A DNA stretch of 64,000 nucleotides, from the IMG/VR virus record IMGVR_UViG_3300047548_001236, positions 124,001-188,000 of that record, one strand, 5' to 3'. The translations under genes were made by a program, and so were the position numbers. The notes beneath the pieces were generated by a model. The model made no database searches. It was given only the letters and a program-made list of their open reading frames with translations, and was not told the DNA's origin. Numbering within the stretch: the first letter of the stretch is position 1; each line of letters opens with the position of its first letter. Of this stretch, positions 28,640-59,233 are shown piece by piece.

Positions 28640-31600
28640 ATGGCAAACGATAAAAGATTTGTAGCCAAGAATGGTCTAACTACTCAAAATATTTTGTTTG
28701 TAGATAATATCCAGTCTGCAAATAACACCGTTTTGATAGAAATGAAACCAACGAACGAGTTAGTCGTCGCTACAGATGAGCAAGCACTGGTTGTGTCAAA
28801 TACACCAGGTTCTATCCTCACAGTCAACGATTCTACTGGCATACCTACTATTCAGGTAACCGATTACGGTAATATTCTTGTTGGTGATCTTGTAGATAAC
28901 GGTGTAGATAAAATCCAAGCTAGTGGGAGTTTGTTTTCTGAAACCATAAAAACTTCCAAACTATCATTCAAGACTCAGCAAGGTTCAGATGTAATATCAT
29001 CTGAACTAACTAGTAACACTGAAGTTACGTTTATTGGTGATAGCAACGATATACTGTCAATGGGATTAGACCCTAATAGTTCACTTTTTACAGTCAACGA
29101 TATTTCTGGTGTGCCTTCGATTGAAGTTGTTGACGATGGTACTGTAAGATTAGCAGAAATTATCGGGAATGTCGGCGTTGGATTAGCGTCGCCGTCAGAA
29201 AAATTGCATGTGCAAGGAAATGTAAGAGCAACGTCGTTGATGGCTGCTAACGGTTCTGCTGCTTCCCCAGCCTTTGATTTTGCTGCTGACCCTAACACTG
29301 GTATGTTTTCTGCTGGAGCTGATACGATTGGGTTCTCTACGAACGGCACGATAGCGGCAGCTATTACATCGACAGGTAACCTGCGTCTGTTCAACACTGC
29401 CGGAACCTTCTACACGGAAATCTCCAACCAACCGACAGCTAATAACACTCTGACACTACCGGCCACAGGCAACGTGACCCTTGTGTCGGGAACGATGGTT
29501 CCAACTACTGGTACTGGCGCGACTGGAACGTGGGGTATCTCAGTAACTGGTAATGCGGCAACTGCAACCACATTACAAACCTCAAGAAATATCAATGGTA
29601 CACTTTTCAACGGTTCTGCTGATATTACGATACCGCGTGTAAGAGCAGCTGACGATCGTACTGTCGCACCGTCGGATTTCTTAACAGCGTATACTACTTT
29701 TGGATTTGGTTCATGGAATAACAATAATACCTCCCCCTATAGCGATTATTTAGTACTTCGCAACTATACAGACTCTACTGGCGGAAATGATAATATGCTA
29801 TCGTTCCGTAAAGATACGTTAGGCATAAGACTGTGGCAAGCACCATATGGCAATAACTCACCTTTCTCAACTTTTAAAGATGTAGCTTGGACAGACGGTA
29901 CTAATGCAACAGGCACTTGGAACATTAGCGTTTCTACGGCAAACAATGCTACCAATCTCAACGGGCAATCAGCTTCATATTATCTTGATTGGACCAATGT
30001 AACCAATAAGCCAGATCCTGTAATAACCCTGGCGGGCGATCTTACTGGTTCTGTTACTTTGACTGATTTAGGATCAGGCACACTCACTGCAACAATTGCC
30101 GCTAATTCAGTTGCTCTTGGCGCAGATACTACAGGTAATTATGTTGCTTCCCTTATACAGGGAACTGGTGTAACTATTACAAATAATACGGGTGAATCAG
30201 CTACACCGACGATTGCTATTGGACAAGACGTAAGTATATCTGCAAATGTCCAATTTGCAAATATGATTGTTTCTGGTGATCTAACAGTTAACGGTACGAC
30301 TACAACAATCAACACCACAAATCTTACCACAAAAGATACACTGATTGAACTTAACAGTGGAGCAAATACTAGTATCAATGATTCTGGTATTCTAATCAAT
30401 CGAGGATCCACTGGGGCTAATGCTTTTATTGGTTGGAATGAAACAACAGATAAATTTGTTGTAGGTACGACAACCGCAACTGGGAATACAACAGGTAACC
30501 TAGCTGTAACAGCTGGAACCTTAGTAGCTGCGTCATTTGAAGGTTCTTTGAGTGGTAATGCAACCACCTCAACTACCGCCAATAATATCGCTGGTGGAGT
30601 CGCTGGAGGGGTCCCTTATCAAAGTGGAGTTGGAACAACCGCTATAACAGCCGCAGGTACTGCCGGCCAGGTTTTTGTTTCTGCGGGTTCAAGTGCCCCA
30701 TCATGGCAGACGTTGACTCTTGAGAATATTCCTGATGCGTGGGTTAAACGTAGTGTCAAAGCAGCCACGACTGCAAATATTACTTTATCGGGTGCACAAA
30801 CTATCGACGGTGTTTCGGTAGTCGCAGGGGATAGAGTTCTTGTAAAGAACCAAACTGCTGCCGCTGAAAATGGTATCTATGTCGTAGCAGCGGGTGCTTG
30901 GACAAGAGCAGCTGATGCTAATATTTCATCAGAATTAGCAGCAGCAACTGTAGGTATTGACCAAGGTACTACAAACGGCGGTAAAACTTATGATACCGAT
31001 TTTAAGGGCACTGATACTCTTGGTACAACTGCAATGTCTTGGTACAGAGTATTAGATGCTGCTTCTATAGGTTCCGAAGTTCAAGCATATGATGCCGGTC
31101 TGCAATCCATTGCAGGTCTAACCACCGCGGCAGATCGTATGATATATACAACTGCAGCAGATACATATGCTGTTACTACATTAACAGCTGCTGGTAGAGC
31201 AATTCTAGACGATGCTGATGCTGCAGCCCAGCGCACTACACTTGGACTTGGAACGGCCAATAACGTCACCTTTGCAACTGTAACAGCTACAACATCTTTG
31301 ACTTCTCCATTACTGACTAATGCTGGTACTCTATCACTTTCAGCTACTGGTTCAAACGTCATTGCTGCATCAACAAATGGTTCAGAACGTTTACGTATTA
31401 CAGACACCGGTAGAGTAGGTATTGGCACTACAATTCCTACAACATCACTTCATGTAACTGCGACTCCCCCAGCAAGCATCCCTACTGCTGGGGCTGCTTC
31501 TTCACACGTAGCCATCGGAACAAATTCTTATGGGACGTCGATTGGTACCCTATCAAGCGGCAGAGGTTATATCCAGCAACAAAGATTTGATGGTAATACG

Positions 31601-49645: not shown

Positions 49646-50626
49646 ATGGTAAAGAGAAATCTACAGGAGTTCAAGGCTGACCACGAGGGCGGTGACGTCG
49701 TTCAGGGTGGAGAAGTCATGGAACCAACAGATGCAGTAGGTGGCCCTATCCAGAAGCGCCTTGCAGACATTATGGCTCCAGTCGATCCCGAAGCTGACGA
49801 AGTCGAAGTTGTAGCTCCAGGTAACGCTGCCGTCAAGGTAGTGAAAGAAGACCAGGATGCTGACGCTGCTTTCACATCGCTGTTTGAAGGTATGGACGTT
49901 TCTGCTGACTTCAAAGGCAAGGTAAAGCTTGTTTTTGAGGCTGCTGTTAACGAAGCTGCTGAGACTAAGATCGCAGAAGCTGTCGAAGAAATGGAAGCCA
50001 AGACGGCTGCCCTAACCGAGGAGCTTGAAGTCAAGTTCCAAGGCCAGCTCGACGAAGCTGTTAATGAAGCTGTCAACGGTATTGTCGAAAACCTCGACGC
50101 ATATCTTGACTATGTCGTTGCAGAATGGATGGAAGAGAACAAGGTCGCTATCGAAGCTGGCATTAAGGTTGAAATGGCCGAATCGCTTCTGAACAGCCTC
50201 AAGACCGTGTTCTACGAGCACAACGTTCAGATCGACGAAGAAACAATCGACGTCGTTGCAGACCTCGAAGAGCAAATTGCTGAGCTGGAAGCCAAGGCTA
50301 ACCAGGCTATCAATGAGAGCATCGAGCTTGCAGAAGAAGTCAAGGCTCTTCGCGCTGAAACTATCTTCAACGAAGTAGCAGAAGGTTTGACTACAACTCA
50401 GGCTGAGCGTCTTCGCGTTCTGTCTGAAAAGCTGAACTTCGATGACTCCGACAACTACAAGCAAGACCTGATGACTTTGAAAGAGTCGTTCTTCAAGGCT
50501 AAGGCTGTAGTCAAAGAAGAAGTCGAAGAGATGCTGACCGAAGAGACAGCTCCTAAGAAGACTGTTTCCCAATATGATTCTGTAAATGCACTCGCCGCAG
50601 CTATCAGCTCGATTAAGATTAAGTGA
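49646..50626 (+). CDS. 22: Prohead scaffold protein gp22
   Basis: Acidic coiled coil with FEAAV, YLDYVVAEWMEEN and ESLLNSLK motifs. Confidence 0.9.
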   Translation: MVKRNLQEFKADHEGGDVVQGGEVMEPTDAVGGPIQKRLADIMAPVDPEADEVEVVAPGNAAVKVVKEDQDADAAFTSLFEGMDVSADFKGKVKLVFEAAVNEAAETKIAEAVEEMEAKTAALTEELEVKFQGQLDEAVNEAVNGIVENLDAYLDYVVAEWMEENKVAIEAGIKVEMAESLLNSLKTVFYEHNVQIDEETIDVVADLEEQIAELEAKANQAINESIELAEEVKALRAETIFNEVAEGLTTTQAERLRVLSEKLNFDDSDNYKQDLMTLKESFFKAKAVVKEEVEEMLTEETAPKKTVSQYDSVNALAAAISSIKIK

Positions 50627-55526: not shown

Positions 55527-55955
55527 TCAGACCCCGTAGAGCTCTGTGGCGATTGCACCAACTTGTTTCATGTCTGCCAGCGCACCCCAATGAGACTTCG
55601 CCCACTTCATGATCTCACCCTTGTTTTGCACTTGCTTGCCATTAAAGGCAAATACAAGAGCCGAACGGATGTCATCCTCGGAAGCCATCTGAGGCAGAAC
55701 CGATTGCAGGATCTGCTTTTCGAAGTTGAAAGCAACCTTGCGACCGTCGTCTGTCGCAACTTTCAGGTTTTCGTCGATCGTCGCAATCAGCTTTTGAACG
55801 ACCTTGATCGCTTCATCGTCAGTGGTTGCACGGTTGCCGTTGTTCTTACCGATCTTCTCAATCTCGCTAAGAGCAAACGTGATCGAAGCTGCAACAGGAT
55901 TTCGCTCTTTACGTAGCCGGAGCGACTCGGCTTTTAGTTTCTCAATCACACTCAT
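55527..55955 (-). CDS. GatB/YqeY-domain protein
   Basis: EIEKIGK...TDDEAIKVVQK...E...L...LPQM...GEIM...ADMKQV pattern. Confidence 0.75.
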   Translation of the reverse strand: MSVIEKLKAESLRLRKERNPVAASITFALSEIEKIGKNNGNRATTDDEAIKVVQKLIATIDENLKVATDDGRKVAFNFEKQILQSVLPQMASEDDIRSALVFAFNGKQVQNKGEIMKWAKSHWGALADMKQVGAIATELYGV

Positions 55956-55967
55956 GTTGTATTTCCT

Positions 55968-56354
55968 TTATTTGATTTGAATCCGGTCAAACAATCGTCG
56001 AAAGACGTCGTGACATGTATGCCTATACTCATGCAGACTCATAGGTTTAGCAGGACCTAGATTTAGCCTGGTTTTATTGTAGCGTTCCCACGCTTCGCTC
56101 GTTTCATAAACGTAGTCTGCGTGCTGGAAGCGATTCAGGTTTTCTTGAGCTACGACATCCCAATCCACATCTTCTATTGGTATGTTGTTGTACTGACCAT
56201 CTGCGTATTGTTTGGGTTTAGTGCGCAACTGCTCAAAATTTGAGACGCCTCGAAGCCTCTCAATCATTCTTATTGCAGCCTCAGCTTCGGCTTCTGATGC
56301 ACCGTTTTGGACGGTCTTCAATGATAAAGCCCGGATTTTCTGCTCTATGCTCAT
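55968..56354 (-). CDS. Hypothetical protein with a DUF2786-like N-terminus
   Basis: KIRAL...GASEAEAEAA motif. Confidence 0.5.
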   Translation of the reverse strand: MSIEQKIRALSLKTVQNGASEAEAEAAIRMIERLRGVSNFEQLRTKPKQYADGQYNNIPIEDVDWDVVAQENLNRFQHADYVYETSEAWERYNKTRLNLGPAKPMSLHEYRHTCHDVFRRLFDRIQIK

Positions 56355-56360
56355 AATACC

Positions 56361-56582
56361 TCACATTGTGTGAGCAGCACCGCGTTGTGCTAACTCGCGC
56401 CAAACCTCATGACCGACGACCATCATAGCCAACGCATTGTCATCCATATACTTAGATGCGATTAGTCGAAGTTGGTCGACTGGACCCACAGTACCTGTTT
56501 TCTCGAACAGCTCCATTTCATCAAAAATGTCCCAGAGCTCTTTGTTGGATAGGTTTCCGATGTGTTTTCTCACTTTGCTCAT
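56361..56582 (-). CDS. Hypothetical protein
   Basis: Coupled to neighbours. Confidence 0.6.
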   Translation of the reverse strand: MSKVRKHIGNLSNKELWDIFDEMELFEKTGTVGPVDQLRLIASKYMDDNALAMMVVGHEVWRELAQRGAAHTM

Positions 56583-56773
56583 ACTTCTTCTCCCATATCA
56601 CAACCAGGCTTTCCTTCAATCACAGTGGGAATGCCTCCAAACTTCACGCAGATCTCAGGATCACGTTTGTCGTAGAGTGCGGTATATAGAATGAGAACCA
56701 CGATCCCCATAACCATTACCGCACTCATGGCAGTCCCTAGAATTCGAGTCAGTCTCTCTGCATTGTACATCAT
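56579..56773 (-). CDS. Small membrane protein
   Basis: Hydrophobic helix. GGAG RBS at 56781-56784. Confidence 0.6.
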   Translation of the reverse strand: MMYNAERLTRILGTAMSAVMVMGIVVLILYTALYDKRDPEICVKFGGIPTVIEGKPGCDMGEEV

Positions 56774-56774
56774 A

Positions 56775-56867
56775 TTACAACTCCACATCTACAAAATCAA
56801 GCTCTCCGATGCATTGAAAGATGGTCCGACCATACTTGTACTACATCGTATGATGCCAATGCCCAAA
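56775..56867 (-). pseudogene. Decayed duplicate of the metallophosphoesterase 3' end
   Basis: Translates FGHWHHTM*YKYGRTIFQCIGELDFVDVEL*, compared with FGHWHHSMAYQFGRTVFVCLGELDYIDVDL in 57763-58449. Confidence 0.85.
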
Positions 56868-56868
56868 G

Positions 56869-56876
56869 TATAAATA
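56869..56876 (+). promoter_or_regulatory. Late promoter of the inserted endonuclease gene
   Basis: TATAAATA at the insertion junction, with AGGAGG RBS at 56895-56900. Confidence 0.8.
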
Positions 56877-56907
56877 CATTATACTAAACGCTCAAGGAGG
56901 GCAACTG

Positions 56908-57762
56908 TTGTTTTATCTATATGTAAAAACTCACAACATCACTGGTCTTAAATATTTGGGGCAAACATCGTCGACCAATCCTCACGCCTATAAGGGTTCG
57001 GGTGTGTTTTGGAGAAGGCATCTCCAAAAGTATGGGTCAGACTTTTCAACTCAAATTTTATTAGCAACAGATGACAAAGACGAATTAAAAGCAACAGGAG
57101 AGTTTTTCAGTAGACTGTGGGGAGTGGTTCGAAATAGACAGTGGGCTAACCTTAAAGAGGAATCAGGCGACGGTGGTTGGGATCACATTAACAACTTCCC
57201 AGATCTTTACAGAGAACAGCGCAAGAAAAATATGTCTGCTGTCGGTTCGCAAAACAAAGACACAGTTGCTATTGTTGATCAGTGTGGGTCGAAAAGACGT
57301 GTACCAGTAGATGTGTTCAGAGCAAATGTAGGGGACTTGAAAGGCCACACGACAGGTATGTTTGCAGCATATGATGAAAACGGCAATATGCATTACGTGT
57401 CGTCGTCCGATCCACTATTTTCCTCAGGTGTCTTAAAAAGTAACAATAAGGGAAAGATTTATATAACAGACGGGAATACCTACAAACTTGTCCATCCAAA
57501 CGATGGCATACCAGAGGGTTGGCACCTCGGTGAAAACAGAACACGTCCCAACAATAACAAGGTATGGGTAACTAACGCTCTAGGCGAATCAAAGATGGTG
57601 TTCCGGGATAAGATTGAAGACGGTTGGGTATTAGGCAGAAAGTATACACAAAAACACCCTCGTGCGAAAACAAAGTGGGTTAACGACGGAATACGCAATT
57701 ATCGGATACCCGCAGACCAAAAATTATATAACGGATGGTCTGCGGGTAAAATAAAGGGTTGA
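56908..57762 (+). CDS. Free-standing GIY-YIG (Seg-like) homing endonuclease, opposite to the surrounding operon
   Basis: FYLYVKTH...KYLGQT...YKGSG...W motifs, and three C-terminal (W/Y)xxDG...GW repeats. Confidence 0.85.
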   Translation: MFYLYVKTHNITGLKYLGQTSSTNPHAYKGSGVFWRRHLQKYGSDFSTQILLATDDKDELKATGEFFSRLWGVVRNRQWANLKEESGDGGWDHINNFPDLYREQRKKNMSAVGSQNKDTVAIVDQCGSKRRVPVDVFRANVGDLKGHTTGMFAAYDENGNMHYVSSSDPLFSSGVLKSNNKGKIYITDGNTYKLVHPNDGIPEGWHLGENRTRPNNNKVWVTNALGESKMVFRDKIEDGWVLGRKYTQKHPRAKTKWVNDGIRNYRIPADQKLYNGWSAGKIKG

Positions 57763-58449
57763 TCAACCAAACTTACGTGTAATCGCGTCGTGGATCTGTT
57801 CAGAATCGCTTAAATCCACATCGATGTAGTCAAGTTCTCCGAGACACACAAACACAGTACGACCGAACTGATAAGCCATGCTGTGATGCCAATGACCAAA
57901 AAAATGAAAGTCGGGCTGGTGTGCATCAAACATAGCCTGAAACGCTTGACCAGTCCGCGTATTGATCTTCTTGGCGTTTGGACCACCGATTGCCAAACCT
58001 GTCTGCACGAACATTTCATACGTTACGTCTGTGGGACCGTCGTGTGTAATCATGACACGAGGTTGAACGGTAACATAGACGTCGTAAAGACGATTAAGCT
58101 GCTCAATAGACAGCTCTTCATCTCGCCACCAGTCGAACCCCTCACGGCGATAAGCCCAATCGATAGACCACGCACCACCAATGAACATTACGTCGTTTTC
58201 GATCGTACCGTCGTTGATAAACCCAGGCATCTGTTTGCATCGAGCTGGATTGTCGTGATTACCACGGATAAACCGATGCTGTGGATTTACCGTTTGCCAA
58301 TCTGTGACACTCTCGTGCCAGTAGTCGCCAGCAAAGCCAATTCCAAAGTCCCCTACCTGAATCGTGGGACCTTTGAAATCAGCAATACTGTAGGCCTGAT
58401 AATCATAAATCTTGCCGTGAATGTCGCCGATTAGTCTTGTCAGTTTCAT
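57763..58449 (-). CDS. Calcineurin-like metallophosphoesterase
   Basis: GDIHG, VGDFG, GNHD, TH and GHWH motifs. Confidence 0.9.
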   Translation of the reverse strand: MKLTRLIGDIHGKIYDYQAYSIADFKGPTIQVGDFGIGFAGDYWHESVTDWQTVNPQHRFIRGNHDNPARCKQMPGFINDGTIENDVMFIGGAWSIDWAYRREGFDWWRDEELSIEQLNRLYDVYVTVQPRVMITHDGPTDVTYEMFVQTGLAIGGPNAKKINTRTGQAFQAMFDAHQPDFHFFGHWHHSMAYQFGRTVFVCLGELDYIDVDLSDSEQIHDAITRKFG

Positions 58450-58664
58450 TTGTTTTTACTCAAACTCACGTTGACGACAAGACAGAATTCTGCCTTGTCA
58501 GATAGATTGTAGTAGTACTGGACATGATTGACCCAGCCACCTGCTTTATCTGAGTCGATGAATTCACCGACTCGTGGGATGTGTAGAGGGTCGTCGACAC
58601 AGAATTTGTTATTGGTCATCCCATATTGATCATTCTCGAAAATCCACATGCGTGTACGGGGCAT
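58446..58664 (-). CDS. Hypothetical protein
   Basis: Coupled on both sides. Confidence 0.6.
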   Translation of the reverse strand: MPRTRMWIFENDQYGMTNNKFCVDDPLHIPRVGEFIDSDKAGGWVNHVQYYYNLSDKAEFCLVVNVSLSKNK

Positions 58665-59030
58665 TCAATTCCCCGTATGCTTGAGATAGTTGATCAGCAA
58701 GCCCTCAATGTTGCGCTTGCCAATCGGGTTCTTGCTGTGAACGGTGAACTGGAAATTCTCGGGAATCTTCCACTTTCCGTCCATATCACCTTCGACGATC
58801 TTCTGAACGATTTCGTAACCATTCAGAGTGACTTCCTCGGGGCCCAGATCATGATCGAAGCTGATGAACTCAGGCATACCGTAGGTTTCGATCAGGTTCA
58901 TGACCTCGGGCCAGTCACGAGCGACGAACCAATCGTCGCGGACGCCATACCAATCAGCCCACGTGGCATCCGACGGCCAGCGCTCATCATCGATAAACAG
59001 ATTGTACGACATTTCAGTTGTCTCCCTCAC
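58665..59030 (-). CDS. Cyclic-phosphate-processing receiver-like domain protein
   Basis: LFIDDER, ISFDHDLG, GYE and VHSKNPIG motifs. Confidence 0.7.
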   Translation of the reverse strand: MRETTEMSYNLFIDDERWPSDATWADWYGVRDDWFVARDWPEVMNLIETYGMPEFISFDHDLGPEEVTLNGYEIVQKIVEGDMDGKWKIPENFQFTVHSKNPIGKRNIEGLLINYLKHTGN

Positions 59031-59233
59031 TTGCGCTTCTTGAGATCTTCGAACGTGAAGATCTTACCGTTGATCGTATGCTCACCACGGATCAACGTGG
59101 CGAACGCCATCGGCCACTGACCGATCGATTTGCAAGCACGCTCAGCAAAGTCTGCTGCGTGCTCAGCATTGTTGCCTTCAGCAACCTTGTACGAACCTTC
59201 TTTGAACATGGCGTAGACGTCGTAGGTCATCAT
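59027..59233 (-). CDS. Hypothetical protein
   Basis: AGGAG RBS. First gene after an early promoter. Confidence 0.6.
   Translation of the reverse strand: MMTYDVYAMFKEGSYKVAEGNNAEHAADFAERACKSIGQWPMAFATLIRGEHTINGKIFTFEDLKKRK

What the first reader, a model, noticed from the sequence alone, without database searches (positions are those of the whole stretch)
56771..58449. Fossil of a homing-endonuclease invasion: displaced original gene end kept for its RBS
The endonuclease (plus strand) sits between the intact phosphoesterase gene and a decayed duplicate of its last 30 codons (FGHWHHTM*YKYGRTIFQCIGELDFVDVEL*). The duplicate starts at the catalytic GHWH motif, right at the endonuclease's late promoter. 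The element apparently inserted into the gene and supplied a replacement, presumably resistant, 3' end. The old end survives because it holds the GGAG RBS (56781-56784) for the next gene. The two stops abut in a GGTTGATCAACC palindrome. This predicts the cleavage site lies near the GHWH codons.
Basis: partly seen in the sequence, partly recalled or inferred. Interest (0 to 1): 0.62.

Follow-up and report, generated by a model that had tools for sequence, protein, structure and literature searches.

The report
Homing-endonuclease cassette with spare gene end
A selfish endonuclease gene has inserted into a freshwater T4-like phage's phosphoesterase gene, bringing a replacement gene end and leaving the original end as a dead copy; the same event recurs at the same codon in many phages, an arrangement I found described only for fungal mitochondria.

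Summary
The window belongs to a 282,855-bp T4-like freshwater phage. It carries an intact 228-aa metallophosphoesterase (MPE) gene, a convergent 284-aa Seg-like GIY-YIG endonuclease gene whose stop abuts the MPE stop, a TATAAATA late-promoter motif, and a 31-codon dead copy of the MPE end that starts at FGHWH.

The closest endonuclease-free relatives end 15 codons earlier, and their end matches the dead copy (up to 22 of 24 residues after GHWHH). The current end belongs to a different, long-tailed class.

The same layout recurs in at least 8 lineages, including cultured Ochrobactrum phage vB_OspM_OC. The copy always starts at TTYGGNCAYTGGCA. A near-isogenic pair (L031 against L073) shows 7 nt, TGAATGG, replaced by a 1,014-nt cassette. 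That places the break at the Trp182 codon, just upstream of GHWH.

- The long tail is a natural allele of other lineages.
- Only the last 15-20 nt (the RBS) look selected. The rest persists because the insertion is recent.
- The palindrome is probably incidental.

The same architecture is known for fungal mitochondrial mobile ORFs. I found no phage report of it in the papers searched.

The parts
57763..58449 (-). Intact chimeric metallophosphoesterase gene (228 aa). Residues 1 to about 180 come from the phage's own short-class lineage; the end is imported.
   Evidence: Pfam PF00149 and phrog_1649. The N-terminal part is 84-86% identical to short-class relatives, while residues 189-213 are 79-96% identical to long-class ones.
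57901..57910 (-). 10-nt block C TTT CAT TTT (Phe-His-Phe) directly upstream of the repeat. Empty sites have GAR TGG TAY here. Likely immunity difference at the cleavage or recognition site.
   Evidence: All 11 endonuclease-bearing alleles listed have His (Tyr in L162) at position -2. In the tree set, 9 of 9 bearing alleles are non-Trp and 86 of 93 endonuclease-free alleles have Trp. L031 differs from L073 starting exactly at this block.
57763..57900 (-). Imported replacement 3' end (Phe184 to stop, 45 codons) of the long-tailed class, including the 15-residue tail SDSEQIHDAITRKFG.
   Evidence: Alignment with the remnant. Identity to other endonuclease-bearing alleles rises to 85-91% here, while identity to the short-class allele falls to 61-64%.
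56908..57762 (+). Seg-like GIY-YIG homing endonuclease gene (284 aa, TTG start). N-terminal catalytic domain plus three K.W(I/V)TNG..IP.GW..GR repeats. Convergent with the MPE gene; the two stops abut.
   Evidence: phrog_314 'homing endonuclease' at 7e-7. It retains every column that is invariant in the alignment of 22 homologues. The AlphaFold N-domain has pLDDT 88-97, and its best PDB matches are the I-TevI catalytic domain (1mk0, 1ln0; TM 0.66-0.67 by target, probability 1.00, E 0.05-0.2).
56894..56900 (+). Shine-Dalgarno AAGGAGG of the endonuclease gene, 7 nt before the TTG start.
   Evidence: Read from the sequence. Conserved in L005 and L014.
56869..56876 (+). T4-type late-promoter motif TATAAATA at the outer edge of the cassette, abutting the remnant.
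   Evidence: Motif enrichment and its position before late structural genes. A (T/G/C)ATAAATA sits at the same cassette edge in all other lineages.
56775..56867 (-). Displaced native 3' end of the MPE gene (31 codons, short class). In-frame TAG at 56841-56843; its own TAA at 56775-56777.
   Evidence: tblastn E 5e-11. Matches short-class P0011 at 22 of 24 residues after GHWHH.
56854..56867 (-). TTTGGGCATTGGCA, the FGHWH-coding 14-mer that begins every remnant. It is kept even where the rest has decayed. Proposed right-hand homology arm and/or endonuclease binding half-site.
   Evidence: Present directly beyond the endonuclease promoter in the window, L014, L005, L007 (one change), L031, L016, L001, L020, L155 and L162.
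56781..56784 (-). GGAG ribosome-binding site of the next gene, formed by the Val-Glu codons of the displaced end.
   Evidence: Seven nt before the ATG at 56773. Empty sites have the same layout (L006, L073). The decayed remnants of L007 and L001 keep this end.
56579..56773 (-). Next gene (64-aa predicted membrane protein). Its translation start depends on the displaced end.
   Evidence: ORF list, independent gene calls, and a homologue directly after the MPE gene in empty-site L006.
57757..57768 (.). 12-nt palindrome GGTTGATCAACC formed by the two abutting stop codons, each preceded by a Gly codon. Probably incidental.
   Evidence: Read from the sequence. L007 has GGCTGATCAACC; L005 and L014 have AGCTAATCAAGT, which is not a palindrome. 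No terminator-like site lies here.

Best explanation
This is a mobile cassette of about 1.04 kb, at roughly 56868-57910. It consists of the last 46 codons, stop included, of a foreign long-tailed MPE allele, a convergent Seg-like GIY-YIG homing endonuclease gene, and that gene's T4-type late promoter.

Inferred mechanism:
1. The endonuclease cuts endonuclease-free MPE genes at or next to the Trp182 codon (GAR TGG TAY), immediately upstream of the conserved FGHWH codons.
2. The break is repaired from a cassette-bearing co-infecting genome.
3. The left crossover falls in the conserved MPE body (HQPD codons).
4. The right crossover uses the short conserved FGHWH-coding stretch that the donor carries beyond the endonuclease promoter.
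5. The recipient therefore gains a complete substitute gene end plus the endonuclease, and its own end is pushed downstream as an untranslated copy.

The gene stays intact without any splicing. The filled allele is probably immune because the Trp codon is replaced (TGG to CAT) on one side and by promoter sequence on the other.

Afterwards the displaced end decays, except for its last 15-20 nt, which carry the next gene's ribosome-binding site, and its first 14 nt.

Shown here: the architecture, the mosaic ancestry, the recurrence at the same nucleotide position, and the filled/empty pair. Inferred: the cleavage position, the immunity determinant and the repair route.
For: - Duplication and allele classes.
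- Mosaic: L014 against empty L006 is 81-88% identical up to about nt 510 of the gene and 60-68% after. L014 against L005 goes from 70-83% to 91-96%.
- Loci sharing the window's own junction: L007/L008, L013-L015, and L005, where the endonuclease gene is reduced to a ~27-codon stub.
- Independent lineages with the remnant starting at the same FGHWH codon: L016 (endonuclease 55% identical), L031, L001, L155, L162 and cultured Ochrobactrum phage vB_OspM_OC (L020).
- Phylogeny: on a tree of the N-terminal MPE core the 9 bearing rows need 9 changes, and well-supported branches force at least 6.
- Near-isogenic pair: L031 and L073 have flanks 96.7% and 98.3% identical. Native TGAATGG is replaced by 1,014 nt, and the remnant is identical to the empty site over its whole length (first difference about 45 nt into the next gene).
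- Position -2: non-Trp in 9 of 9 bearing against 7 of 93 free alleles (Fisher 5e-9). In 6 supported independent pairs it goes the same way in about 5.9 and never the opposite way (sign test about 0.03).
- Endonuclease intact, with a GIY-YIG-like fold.
- Late promoter.
- Mechanistic precedent: one-sided, microhomology-mediated break repair in T4 intron homing, as reviewed in PMC2988022.
Against: - No biochemical evidence exists for cleavage, for the site, or for immunity.
- Seven endonuclease-free alleles in the tree set also carry His at -2 (L035, L042, L046, L049, L057, L062, L166); L150 and L156, outside that set, do too. The Trp-to-His rule is therefore not absolute, and in the L155 lineage His may be native.
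- Two unrelated DNA-binding modules (C1 and C2) are found on endonucleases at the same site. That is odd if the binding module alone sets the target.
- No empty-site twin of the window's own genome was found. The nucleotide-level boundaries come from another lineage.
- The structural match to I-TevI is convincing by TM-score and probability but weak by E-value (0.05). Pfam does not recognise the protein.
Confidence: 0.8

Rival explanations
1. Reverse polarity. The ancestor was a long-class phage with the endonuclease gene simply sitting in the intergenic space after the MPE gene. The short-class fragment came in later, together with the downstream genes, by illegitimate recombination with another phage.
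For: Long-class alleles without endonuclease exist and look native (L010, L074). Downstream gene content differs among bearing loci: a 77-aa gene in L005 and L007, against the membrane-protein gene in the window and L014.
Against: In L031 both flanks (3 kb upstream, 0.8 kb downstream) match the empty-site genome L073 at 97-98%, so only the cassette is foreign. The window's MPE body is 84-86% identical to short-class relatives and only 69% to the nearest endonuclease-free long-class one. L014 is sister to empty L006 on the N-terminal tree with 97% support.
Confidence: 0.06
2. An unrelated tandem duplication of the gene end by slippage, into which an endonuclease gene later landed. The two copies then diverged in place.
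For: Direct repeats flanking an insert can arise this way. The two copies lie in the same orientation.
Against: The copies differ by about 32% of bases and fall into two allele classes, each of which has close free-living counterparts in other phages. In L031 the downstream copy is identical to the empty-site relative over its whole length while the upstream copy is strongly diverged. In-place divergence cannot give that.
Confidence: 0.02
3. The endonuclease gene sits in a self-splicing intron or an intein-like element. The downstream copy would then be the true last exon and the long tail a read-through.
For: Insertion at codons for a catalytic motif is typical of introns and inteins. Remnants in L005, L014, L016, L031, L155 and L162 are open frames.
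Against: No Rfam family, group I or II introns included, matches 56300-58700 at E up to 1. The endonuclease gene is antisense to the host gene. The upstream copy is a full homologous end with a conserved natural stop. The window's remnant has an in-frame TAG, and the remnants of L007, L001 and L020 lack their middle.
Confidence: 0.02
4. The cassette is now a domesticated or dead passenger. The architecture records one or a few old invasions and is spread by ordinary recombination between phages, not by endonuclease-driven homing.
For: L005 shows that the endonuclease gene can be lost while the rest stays. No filled/empty polymorphism was seen in the source sample. Cleavage is untested.
Against: The window's endonuclease gene is full length and keeps all family-invariant residues. 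The remnants of L031, L014, L005, L155 and L162 are undecayed, which implies recent events in several lineages. The junction lies at the same nucleotide in lineages whose MPE proteins are 46-63% identical to the window's.
Confidence: 0.1

Closest known systems
Mobile endonuclease ORFs (mORFs) that create 'gene hybrids' in fungal mitochondria: Allomyces macrogynus atp6, and Glomus atp6, atp9, cox2 and nad3 (PMC3630166, which cites Paquin, Laforest and Lang 1994)
   Same: A foreign C-terminal segment arrives in frame with the host gene together with an endonuclease ORF. The native C-terminus is displaced downstream. The native copy is the one closest to relatives that lack the element.
   Different: This case is in a tailed phage, not an organelle. 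The endonuclease gene is on the opposite strand with its own late promoter, rather than in phase with or co-oriented to the host gene. It recurs in many phage lineages at a single codon. The end of the displaced copy is reused as the next gene's ribosome-binding site.
Free-standing Seg and Mob homing endonucleases of T4-like phages, with intronless homing and co-conversion of flanking markers (SegE, SegF, SegG; review PMC2988022)
   Same: A GIY-YIG Seg-like enzyme in a T4-like phage. Presence/absence polymorphism between syntenic genomes. Flanking sequence is carried along. Expression signals are tied to the phage programme.
   Different: The T4 elements lie between genes and leave no partial gene duplicate. 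Here the insertion point is inside the coding sequence, and the gene is kept whole by a carried spare end.
[quoted passage not shown]
   Same: It gives a tested route by which an element with good homology on one side only is acquired, through junctions at microhomologies.
   Different: That was a laboratory construct. Here the outcome appears fixed as the standard architecture of a natural element.
Endonuclease insertions that split phage genes: mobE in Aeromonas phage Aeh1 nrdA (PMC3045599), and T4 mobA with gene 60 (the latter from my own knowledge)
   Same: A free-standing endonuclease gene lands inside an essential or conserved coding sequence, and the phage keeps the function.
   Different: In those cases function is saved by assembling two polypeptides or by translational bypass. 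Here it is saved by a duplicated, substituted gene end.
I-TevI acting as autorepressor at an operator that overlaps its own late promoter (mentioned in PMC2988022; details from my own knowledge)
   Same: A GIY-YIG enzyme, a late promoter, and next to that promoter a piece of sequence resembling part of its homing site.
   Different: Binding of this enzyme to the retained FGHWH 14-mer is pure conjecture.

Membership tests
GIY-YIG (Seg-like) homing endonuclease | GIY-YIG catalytic domain: two short Tyr-containing motifs about 10 residues apart, with a conserved downstream Asn and the alpha/beta fold of I-TevI | tested here: met
   YLY(3-5)...YLG(16-18), Y.GSG and invariant N81. phrog_314 at 7e-7. 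Model residues 1-80 have pLDDT 88-97, and the best PDB matches are the I-TevI catalytic domain (TM 0.66-0.67 by target, probability 1.00, but E only 0.05-0.2). Pfam GIY-YIG models do not reach threshold on this protein, only on relatives.
GIY-YIG (Seg-like) homing endonuclease | Present or absent at one site in otherwise syntenic genomes | tested here: met
   L031 against L073 and L093 (97-98% flanks). L014 against L006.
GIY-YIG (Seg-like) homing endonuclease | The same insertion point in independent lineages (site specificity) | tested here: met
   The remnant starts at TTYGGNCAYTGGCA in at least 8 lineages. Supported branches force at least 6 gains or losses.
GIY-YIG (Seg-like) homing endonuclease | Cleaves the endonuclease-free allele and not its own; super-Mendelian inheritance in crosses | not testable with these tools
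   Needs an enzyme assay and phage crosses.
Mitochondrial-type mORF gene hybrid | An inserted foreign C-terminal segment in frame, replacing the function of the native one | tested here: met
Mitochondrial-type mORF gene hybrid | The native C-terminus is retained downstream and is closer to relatives' native ends than the inserted one is | tested here: met
   Up to 22 of 24 against 14-15 of 24 residues. In L031 the remnant is identical to the empty-site end over its whole length.
Mitochondrial-type mORF gene hybrid | Endonuclease ORF co-oriented with, and often in phase with, the host gene; organellar genome | tested here: not met
   The gene is on the opposite strand with its own promoter and RBS, in a phage genome. 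It works like these elements but is not a member of that set.
Group I/II intron or intein carrying a homing endonuclease | A splicing RNA structure, or an in-frame intein with splicing motifs | tested here: not met
   No Rfam match at E up to 1. The endonuclease gene is antisense. The remnant carries a stop in the window and is gutted in L007, L001 and L020.

The most novel reading that the evidence does not exclude
The cassette is an intron-like mobile element that replaces splicing with a carried spare 'exon', and each part of its anatomy has a job:
- The 14-nt FGHWH-coding stretch kept beside the endonuclease's late promoter, even in remnants that have lost everything else (L007, L001, L020), would be the element's right-hand recombination arm and/or a binding half-site through which the enzyme represses its own promoter, as I-TevI does.
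- The Trp182-to-His codon change would be the immunity switch.
- Short-tract repair from the nearer FGHWH copy would explain endonuclease-free alleles that carry His.
- The four catalytic/binding module combinations found at this one site would be allelic recombinants of competing endonucleases.
Probability: 0.3. Interest if true: 0.72.

Novelty: new variant of a known kind. Interest (0 to 1): 0.58.

Why it matters
It shows how a homing endonuclease can colonise the inside of a protein-coding gene in a virus without an intron or an intein, by carrying a substitute gene end.

Metagenomes supply a natural series of stages:
- empty site;
- fresh invasion;
- decaying remnant;
- endonuclease reduced to a stub.

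The comparison predicts the target site to within about 10 nt and names a single codon as the likely immunity determinant. Both predictions can be tested directly. One bearer is a cultured phage, Ochrobactrum phage vB_OspM_OC.

For annotation, short orphan 'GHWH' fragments after such endonuclease genes are displaced gene ends, not genes. They mark the boundaries of horizontally exchanged blocks.

Tried and rejected
- DNA search of the region against 50,697 phage records: no match.
- Sequence and profile searches of the endonuclease against PDB chains: nothing useful. Pfam on the endonuclease: no family even at E 5.
- Rfam on 56300-58700: nothing, so no intron.
- Promoter and terminator scan: counts at or below those of the shuffles. 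There is no terminator between the convergent genes. A 10-of-12 sigma-70-like site lies inside the endonuclease gene on the MPE strand (57750..57723), but the region has no more such sites than shuffled sequence.
- Contigs of four runs laid on 55900-59100: no joints and no empty-site variant of this phage. One low-depth contig in run X2 is a relative's uninterrupted short-class end aligning to the remnant.
- Exact look-ups of the two flanking small proteins returned only the window's own genome and a 12.7-kb Logan contig of run SRR35181291 with the same gene order, for which no DNA was returned. No near-isogenic empty site was found for the window itself.
- Matches of GGNCAYTGGCA in L139 and L180 lie inside other genes, far from any endonuclease gene. 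I treated them as chance.
- Function for the 12-nt palindrome: rejected as unsupported, because it is not conserved in L005 or L014. With two abutting TGA stops, the extension to 12 nt has a chance of about 1 in 64.
- Weak MPE-like tblastn hits elsewhere in the window (50177-50578 and 28844-29305, E 0.02-0.04): not significant.
- A possible endonuclease trace after the L035 gene: looked at and left unresolved.
- Literature searches for a phage precedent of a partial gene-end duplication around a homing endonuclease found only organellar cases. This covers only the library searched.
Full report
**Context.** The window is bases 124001-188000 of a 282,855-bp virus record that CheckV estimates as complete. 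The source is a freshwater metagenome. The phage is T4-like: the window encodes a Gp20-type portal (E 3.5e-161), a gp18-type tail sheath and a T4-type scaffold protein. Structural genes lie on the plus strand up to about 54.4 kb. A block of small minus-strand genes follows, and the finding lies in that block.

**Check of the observation.**
- The MPE gene at 57763-58449 (-) encodes 228 aa (Pfam Metallophos; phrog_1649 at 7e-34).
- An ORF at 56908-57762 (+) encodes 284 aa, starts with TTG 7 nt after AAGGAGG, and ends with a TGA that abuts the reverse-strand TGA of the MPE gene inside GGTTGATCAACC (57757-57768).
- TATAAATA lies at 56869-56876.
- Directly beside it, the minus strand from 56867 to 56775 reads FGHWHHTM*YKYGRTIFQCIGELDFVDVEL*.
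- tblastn of the MPE against the whole window finds this copy at 64.5% identity over 31 residues, E 5e-11. The DNA is about 68% identical over the repeat.
- GGAG (56781-56784) lies 7 nt before the ATG at 56773 of the next gene. Independent gene calls also start that gene there.
- The source run covers the stretch with one contig, no differences and no joints. Two runs from other studies hold identical 151-nt pieces of the endonuclease gene.

**The endonuclease.** Pfam does not recognise the protein, but three lines of evidence point the same way.
- phrog_314 'homing endonuclease' matches residues 1-112.
- Among 195 homologues, many carry NUMOD3, SegE_GIY-YIG or GIY-YIG domains. The alignment shows YLY...YLG, Y.GSG and an invariant Asn, and the window's protein retains all of them.
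- An AlphaFold model has pLDDT 88-97 over residues 1-80. Its best PDB matches are the I-TevI catalytic domain (1mk0, 1ln0; TM 0.66-0.67 by target, probability 1.00, E 0.05-0.2).

The C-terminal two thirds hold three K.W(I/V)TNG...IP.GW..GR repeats. I take it as an intact Seg-like GIY-YIG homing endonuclease.

**The late promoter.** TATAAATA occurs 11 times in the window against 1.75 expected, and no shuffle reaches 11. Nine of the ten plus-strand copies sit 18-60 nt before ORF starts, including the sheath and scaffold genes. That fits T4-type late promoters.

**Two classes of gene end.** A word search found 1,250 MPE relatives. Their C-termini fall mainly into two classes, beside some other extended tails.
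- Short class: about 213 aa, ending ...FGHWHHTMQYKYGRTIFQCIGELDYVDVEL*.
- Long class: about 228 aa, ending ...FGHWHHSMAYQYGRTVFVCLGELDYIDVDLSDSDQIH.AI..KF.*.

The window's N-terminal 177 residues are most like short-class proteins (84-86% to P0003-P0005). Residues 189-213 are only 58-67% identical to short-class proteins but 79-96% identical to long-class ones. The remnant matches short-class ends at up to 22 of 24 positions.

The gene is therefore a chimera. Its body belongs to the short-class lineage, its end is long class, and the phage's own short-class end lies displaced downstream.

**Relatives with and without the endonuclease.**
- *Empty sites.* L006 (short class) has the next gene 3 nt after the MPE stop. 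L002 is likewise empty.
- *Filled sites with the window's own junction (GTATTTATAC|TTTGG...).* L007/L008 have an endonuclease 69% identical. L013-L015 have one 78% identical. In L005 the endonuclease gene is reduced to an in-frame stub of about 27 codons, while the promoter, the long end and an intact remnant stay.
- *Sliding identity.* L014 against empty L006 is 81-88% up to about nt 510 of the gene and 60-68% after it. L014 against L005 goes from 70-83% to 91-96%. The window against L007 goes from 66-76% to 85-90%. The last 140-170 nt of the gene thus travels with the endonuclease gene.
- *Long end without endonuclease.* L010 carries the long tail with neither endonuclease nor remnant, and so do many more distant loci. 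The long end is therefore a natural allele class and is the donor of the cassette's gene end.

**Recurrence.** I surveyed 160 further loci from metagenome and viral contigs and four annotated phages. A convergent Seg-like endonuclease gene abuts or overlaps the MPE stop by up to 38 nt, or lies 9 nt beyond it in L031, in the following loci. Each also has a remnant starting at TTYGGNCAYTGGCA just beyond the endonuclease promoter.
- L031: intact remnant.
- L016: MPE end under 40% identical, endonuclease 55% identical, intact remnant.
- L001 (same contig as L029 and L101): remnant reduced to SGHWH + KDIEL*.
- L155 and L162: MPE 46-49% identical, intact remnants.
- L020: cultured Ochrobactrum phage vB_OspM_OC, remnant reduced to FFGHWH*.

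L045 also has the convergent endonuclease gene, but its contig ends before the place where a remnant would lie.

No allele ending at the standard short position (29 residues after the Gly of GHWH) has such a neighbour; L020, at 30 residues, is the only near-short allele that does.

On a tree of the N-terminal MPE core, which leaves out the cassette, the 9 bearing rows need 9 changes, and well-supported branches alone force at least 6. L014 is sister to empty L006 (97% support). L031 is sister to empty L073 and L093 (99%). L001 nests among empty short-class rows.

The endonucleases themselves are modular. Two catalytic types (N1, N2) and two binding types (C1 repeats; C2 NUMOD3 plus zinc ribbon) occur in all four combinations at this one site.

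**Boundaries at nucleotide level.** L031 and L073 are 96.7% identical over 3.0 kb upstream and 98.3% over 0.8 kb downstream. Aligned at the site:
- Empty site: ...CATCAGCCAGA TGAATGG TAC TTTGGACATTGGCAT...
- Filled, left junction: ...CATCAGCCAGA GTTTCATTTC TTCGGGCATTGG..., followed by the long-class end.
- Filled, right junction: ...TTATTTATCATTT TAC TTTGGACATTGGCAT..., which is then identical to the empty site throughout the remnant and about 45 nt into the next gene.

Seven native bases (TGAATGG, covering the Trp182 codon) are replaced by a 1,014-nt cassette. The conversion tract upstream is at most 10 nt.

In agreement, all 11 bearing alleles in the site table have His (Tyr in L162) at this position. 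In the tree set, 9 of 9 bearing and 7 of 93 free alleles are non-Trp (Fisher 5e-9). In 6 supported independent pairs the character goes the same way in about 5.9 and never the opposite way (sign test about 0.03). L074 carries a long-class end very like L031's cassette end, but with Trp and no endonuclease. The codon change, rather than the end as such, is therefore what tracks the endonuclease.

**Why the remnant persists.** In empty sites the next gene's Shine-Dalgarno sequence is made by the last Val-Glu codons of the MPE gene (L006, L073). After invasion the next gene still needs them.

In decayed remnants the middle is gone:
- L007 reads TTTGACCACTGGCAC...AATGTGGAGCTGTGAATG.
- L001 reads GGACACTGGCAT AAGGACATTGAACTATGA.

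The RBS-bearing end is kept in both.

The other ~75 nt in the window (one nonsense codon), and in L005, L014, L031, L016, L155 and L162 (open frames), are best explained by recency.

TTYGGNCAYTGGCA is the most conserved nucleotide stretch near the break. It is the obvious right-hand crossover point between diverged phages, and a cassette that loses it could no longer home. Its position against the late promoter also recalls the I-TevI operator (and my own knowledge). Both ideas are untested.

**Rivals.**
- Import of the short-class fragment into a long-class genome is contradicted by the flanks of L031 and by the ancestry of the window's gene body.
- In-place divergence of a slippage duplicate is contradicted by the identity of the L031 remnant to the empty site.
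- An intron or intein is excluded by the absence of any Rfam match, the antisense orientation, and stops or deletions in the remnants.
- A now inactive, passively recombining cassette cannot be excluded for the window itself, but several undecayed remnants argue for recent, repeated invasions.

**Comparison with what is known.** The architecture (inserted foreign C-terminus, endonuclease ORF, displaced native C-terminus) is that of the fungal mitochondrial mORF 'gene hybrids', first seen in Allomyces atp6 and later in Glomus (PMC3630166). The enzyme and the host biology are those of the T4 Seg endonucleases. One-sided repair at microhomologies has been shown for T4 intron homing (PMC2988022).

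In four full-text searches and two phage-focused papers I found no description of this arrangement in phages. That is a statement about the library searched, not proof of absence.

I rate it a new variant of a known kind. It is the same principle as the mitochondrial elements in a new host type. It differs in having the endonuclease gene on the opposite strand under its own late promoter, in reusing the displaced end as an RBS, in many independent occurrences at one codon, and in shuffled endonuclease modules.

**Limits.**
- Nothing here shows cleavage, immunity or homing directly.
- The nucleotide-level boundaries come from L031, not from the window's own lineage.
- Only the best 80 loci of each scan were examined.
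- Seven endonuclease-free alleles in the tree set carry His at -2; L150 and L156, outside it, do too.
- The structural match to I-TevI has a weak E-value.

Noticed in passing
window 56908-57762; L001 690-1274; L020 3063-3662; L031, L155 and L162 downstream of the MPE gene: The endonucleases at this one site are modular chimeras. Two catalytic types (N1: xYLYVKTHN..YLGQT; N2: MYYTxY..IYIGAHKT) join at the GGWDH motif to two DNA-binding types (C1: K.WITNG..IP.GW..GR repeats; C2: NUMOD3 plus a CPxC...WHFDNC zinc ribbon). All four combinations occur.
   Followed up: partly
L005 4688-4809: The endonuclease gene is reduced to an in-frame stub of about 27 codons (the first 15 and about the last 12 codons). 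The promoter, the long gene end and an intact remnant are kept, and the remnant frame runs into the next gene's ATG without a stop.
   Followed up: yes
L007 4583-4635: In this decayed remnant the deleted middle is replaced by sequence holding a new TATAAATA on the MPE strand, about 14 nt before the next gene's ATG. It may be a late promoter for the downstream gene.
   Followed up: no
L042 (MPE end and downstream): An endonuclease-free allele inside a short-class clade has His at -2 and a hybrid end: QCIGELDF as in the short class, followed by a long tail. It may be a product of recombination between the two copies, or of endonuclease loss.
   Followed up: partly
L024 550-1149 and beyond: The MPE frame runs on for 285 residues past GHWH into unrelated sequence from residue 200 onward. 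This is either a rearrangement at the same region or a chimeric contig.
   Followed up: no
window 19276-56876 (11 sites): TATAAATA is about six-fold enriched. Nine of the ten plus-strand copies precede ORFs, including the tail sheath (42892) and scaffold (49599) genes. The endonuclease's copy is the only one in the minus-strand gene block.
   Followed up: yes
G000:C1:31798-32511 (outside the window): The same genome holds a second, distant relative of the endonuclease (31% identity) interrupted by a TAA, and a short third match at 99177-99320.
   Followed up: no
L005 303-872, L007 533-1384, L010 475-1062, L006 1260-1787: Relatives carry another reverse-strand Seg-like endonuclease gene between the DUF932 gene and the genes that lead to the PTH2 gene, upstream of the MPE gene. 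This is a second variable endonuclease site in the same gene block.
   Followed up: no
L019 3088-3801 (Rhizobium phage RHph_I1_18, MN988519): A classical GIY-YIG gene of a third type also lies convergent to the MPE gene and overlaps its end by 31 nt. There is no recognisable remnant, and the MPE motif here is FGHYH with His at -2.
   Followed up: partly
window 57723-57750 (-): A sigma-70-like promoter match (TTTACC-16-TATAAT, 10 of 12) lies inside the endonuclease gene on the MPE strand, pointing toward the downstream genes. The region has no more such matches than shuffled sequence.
   Followed up: no
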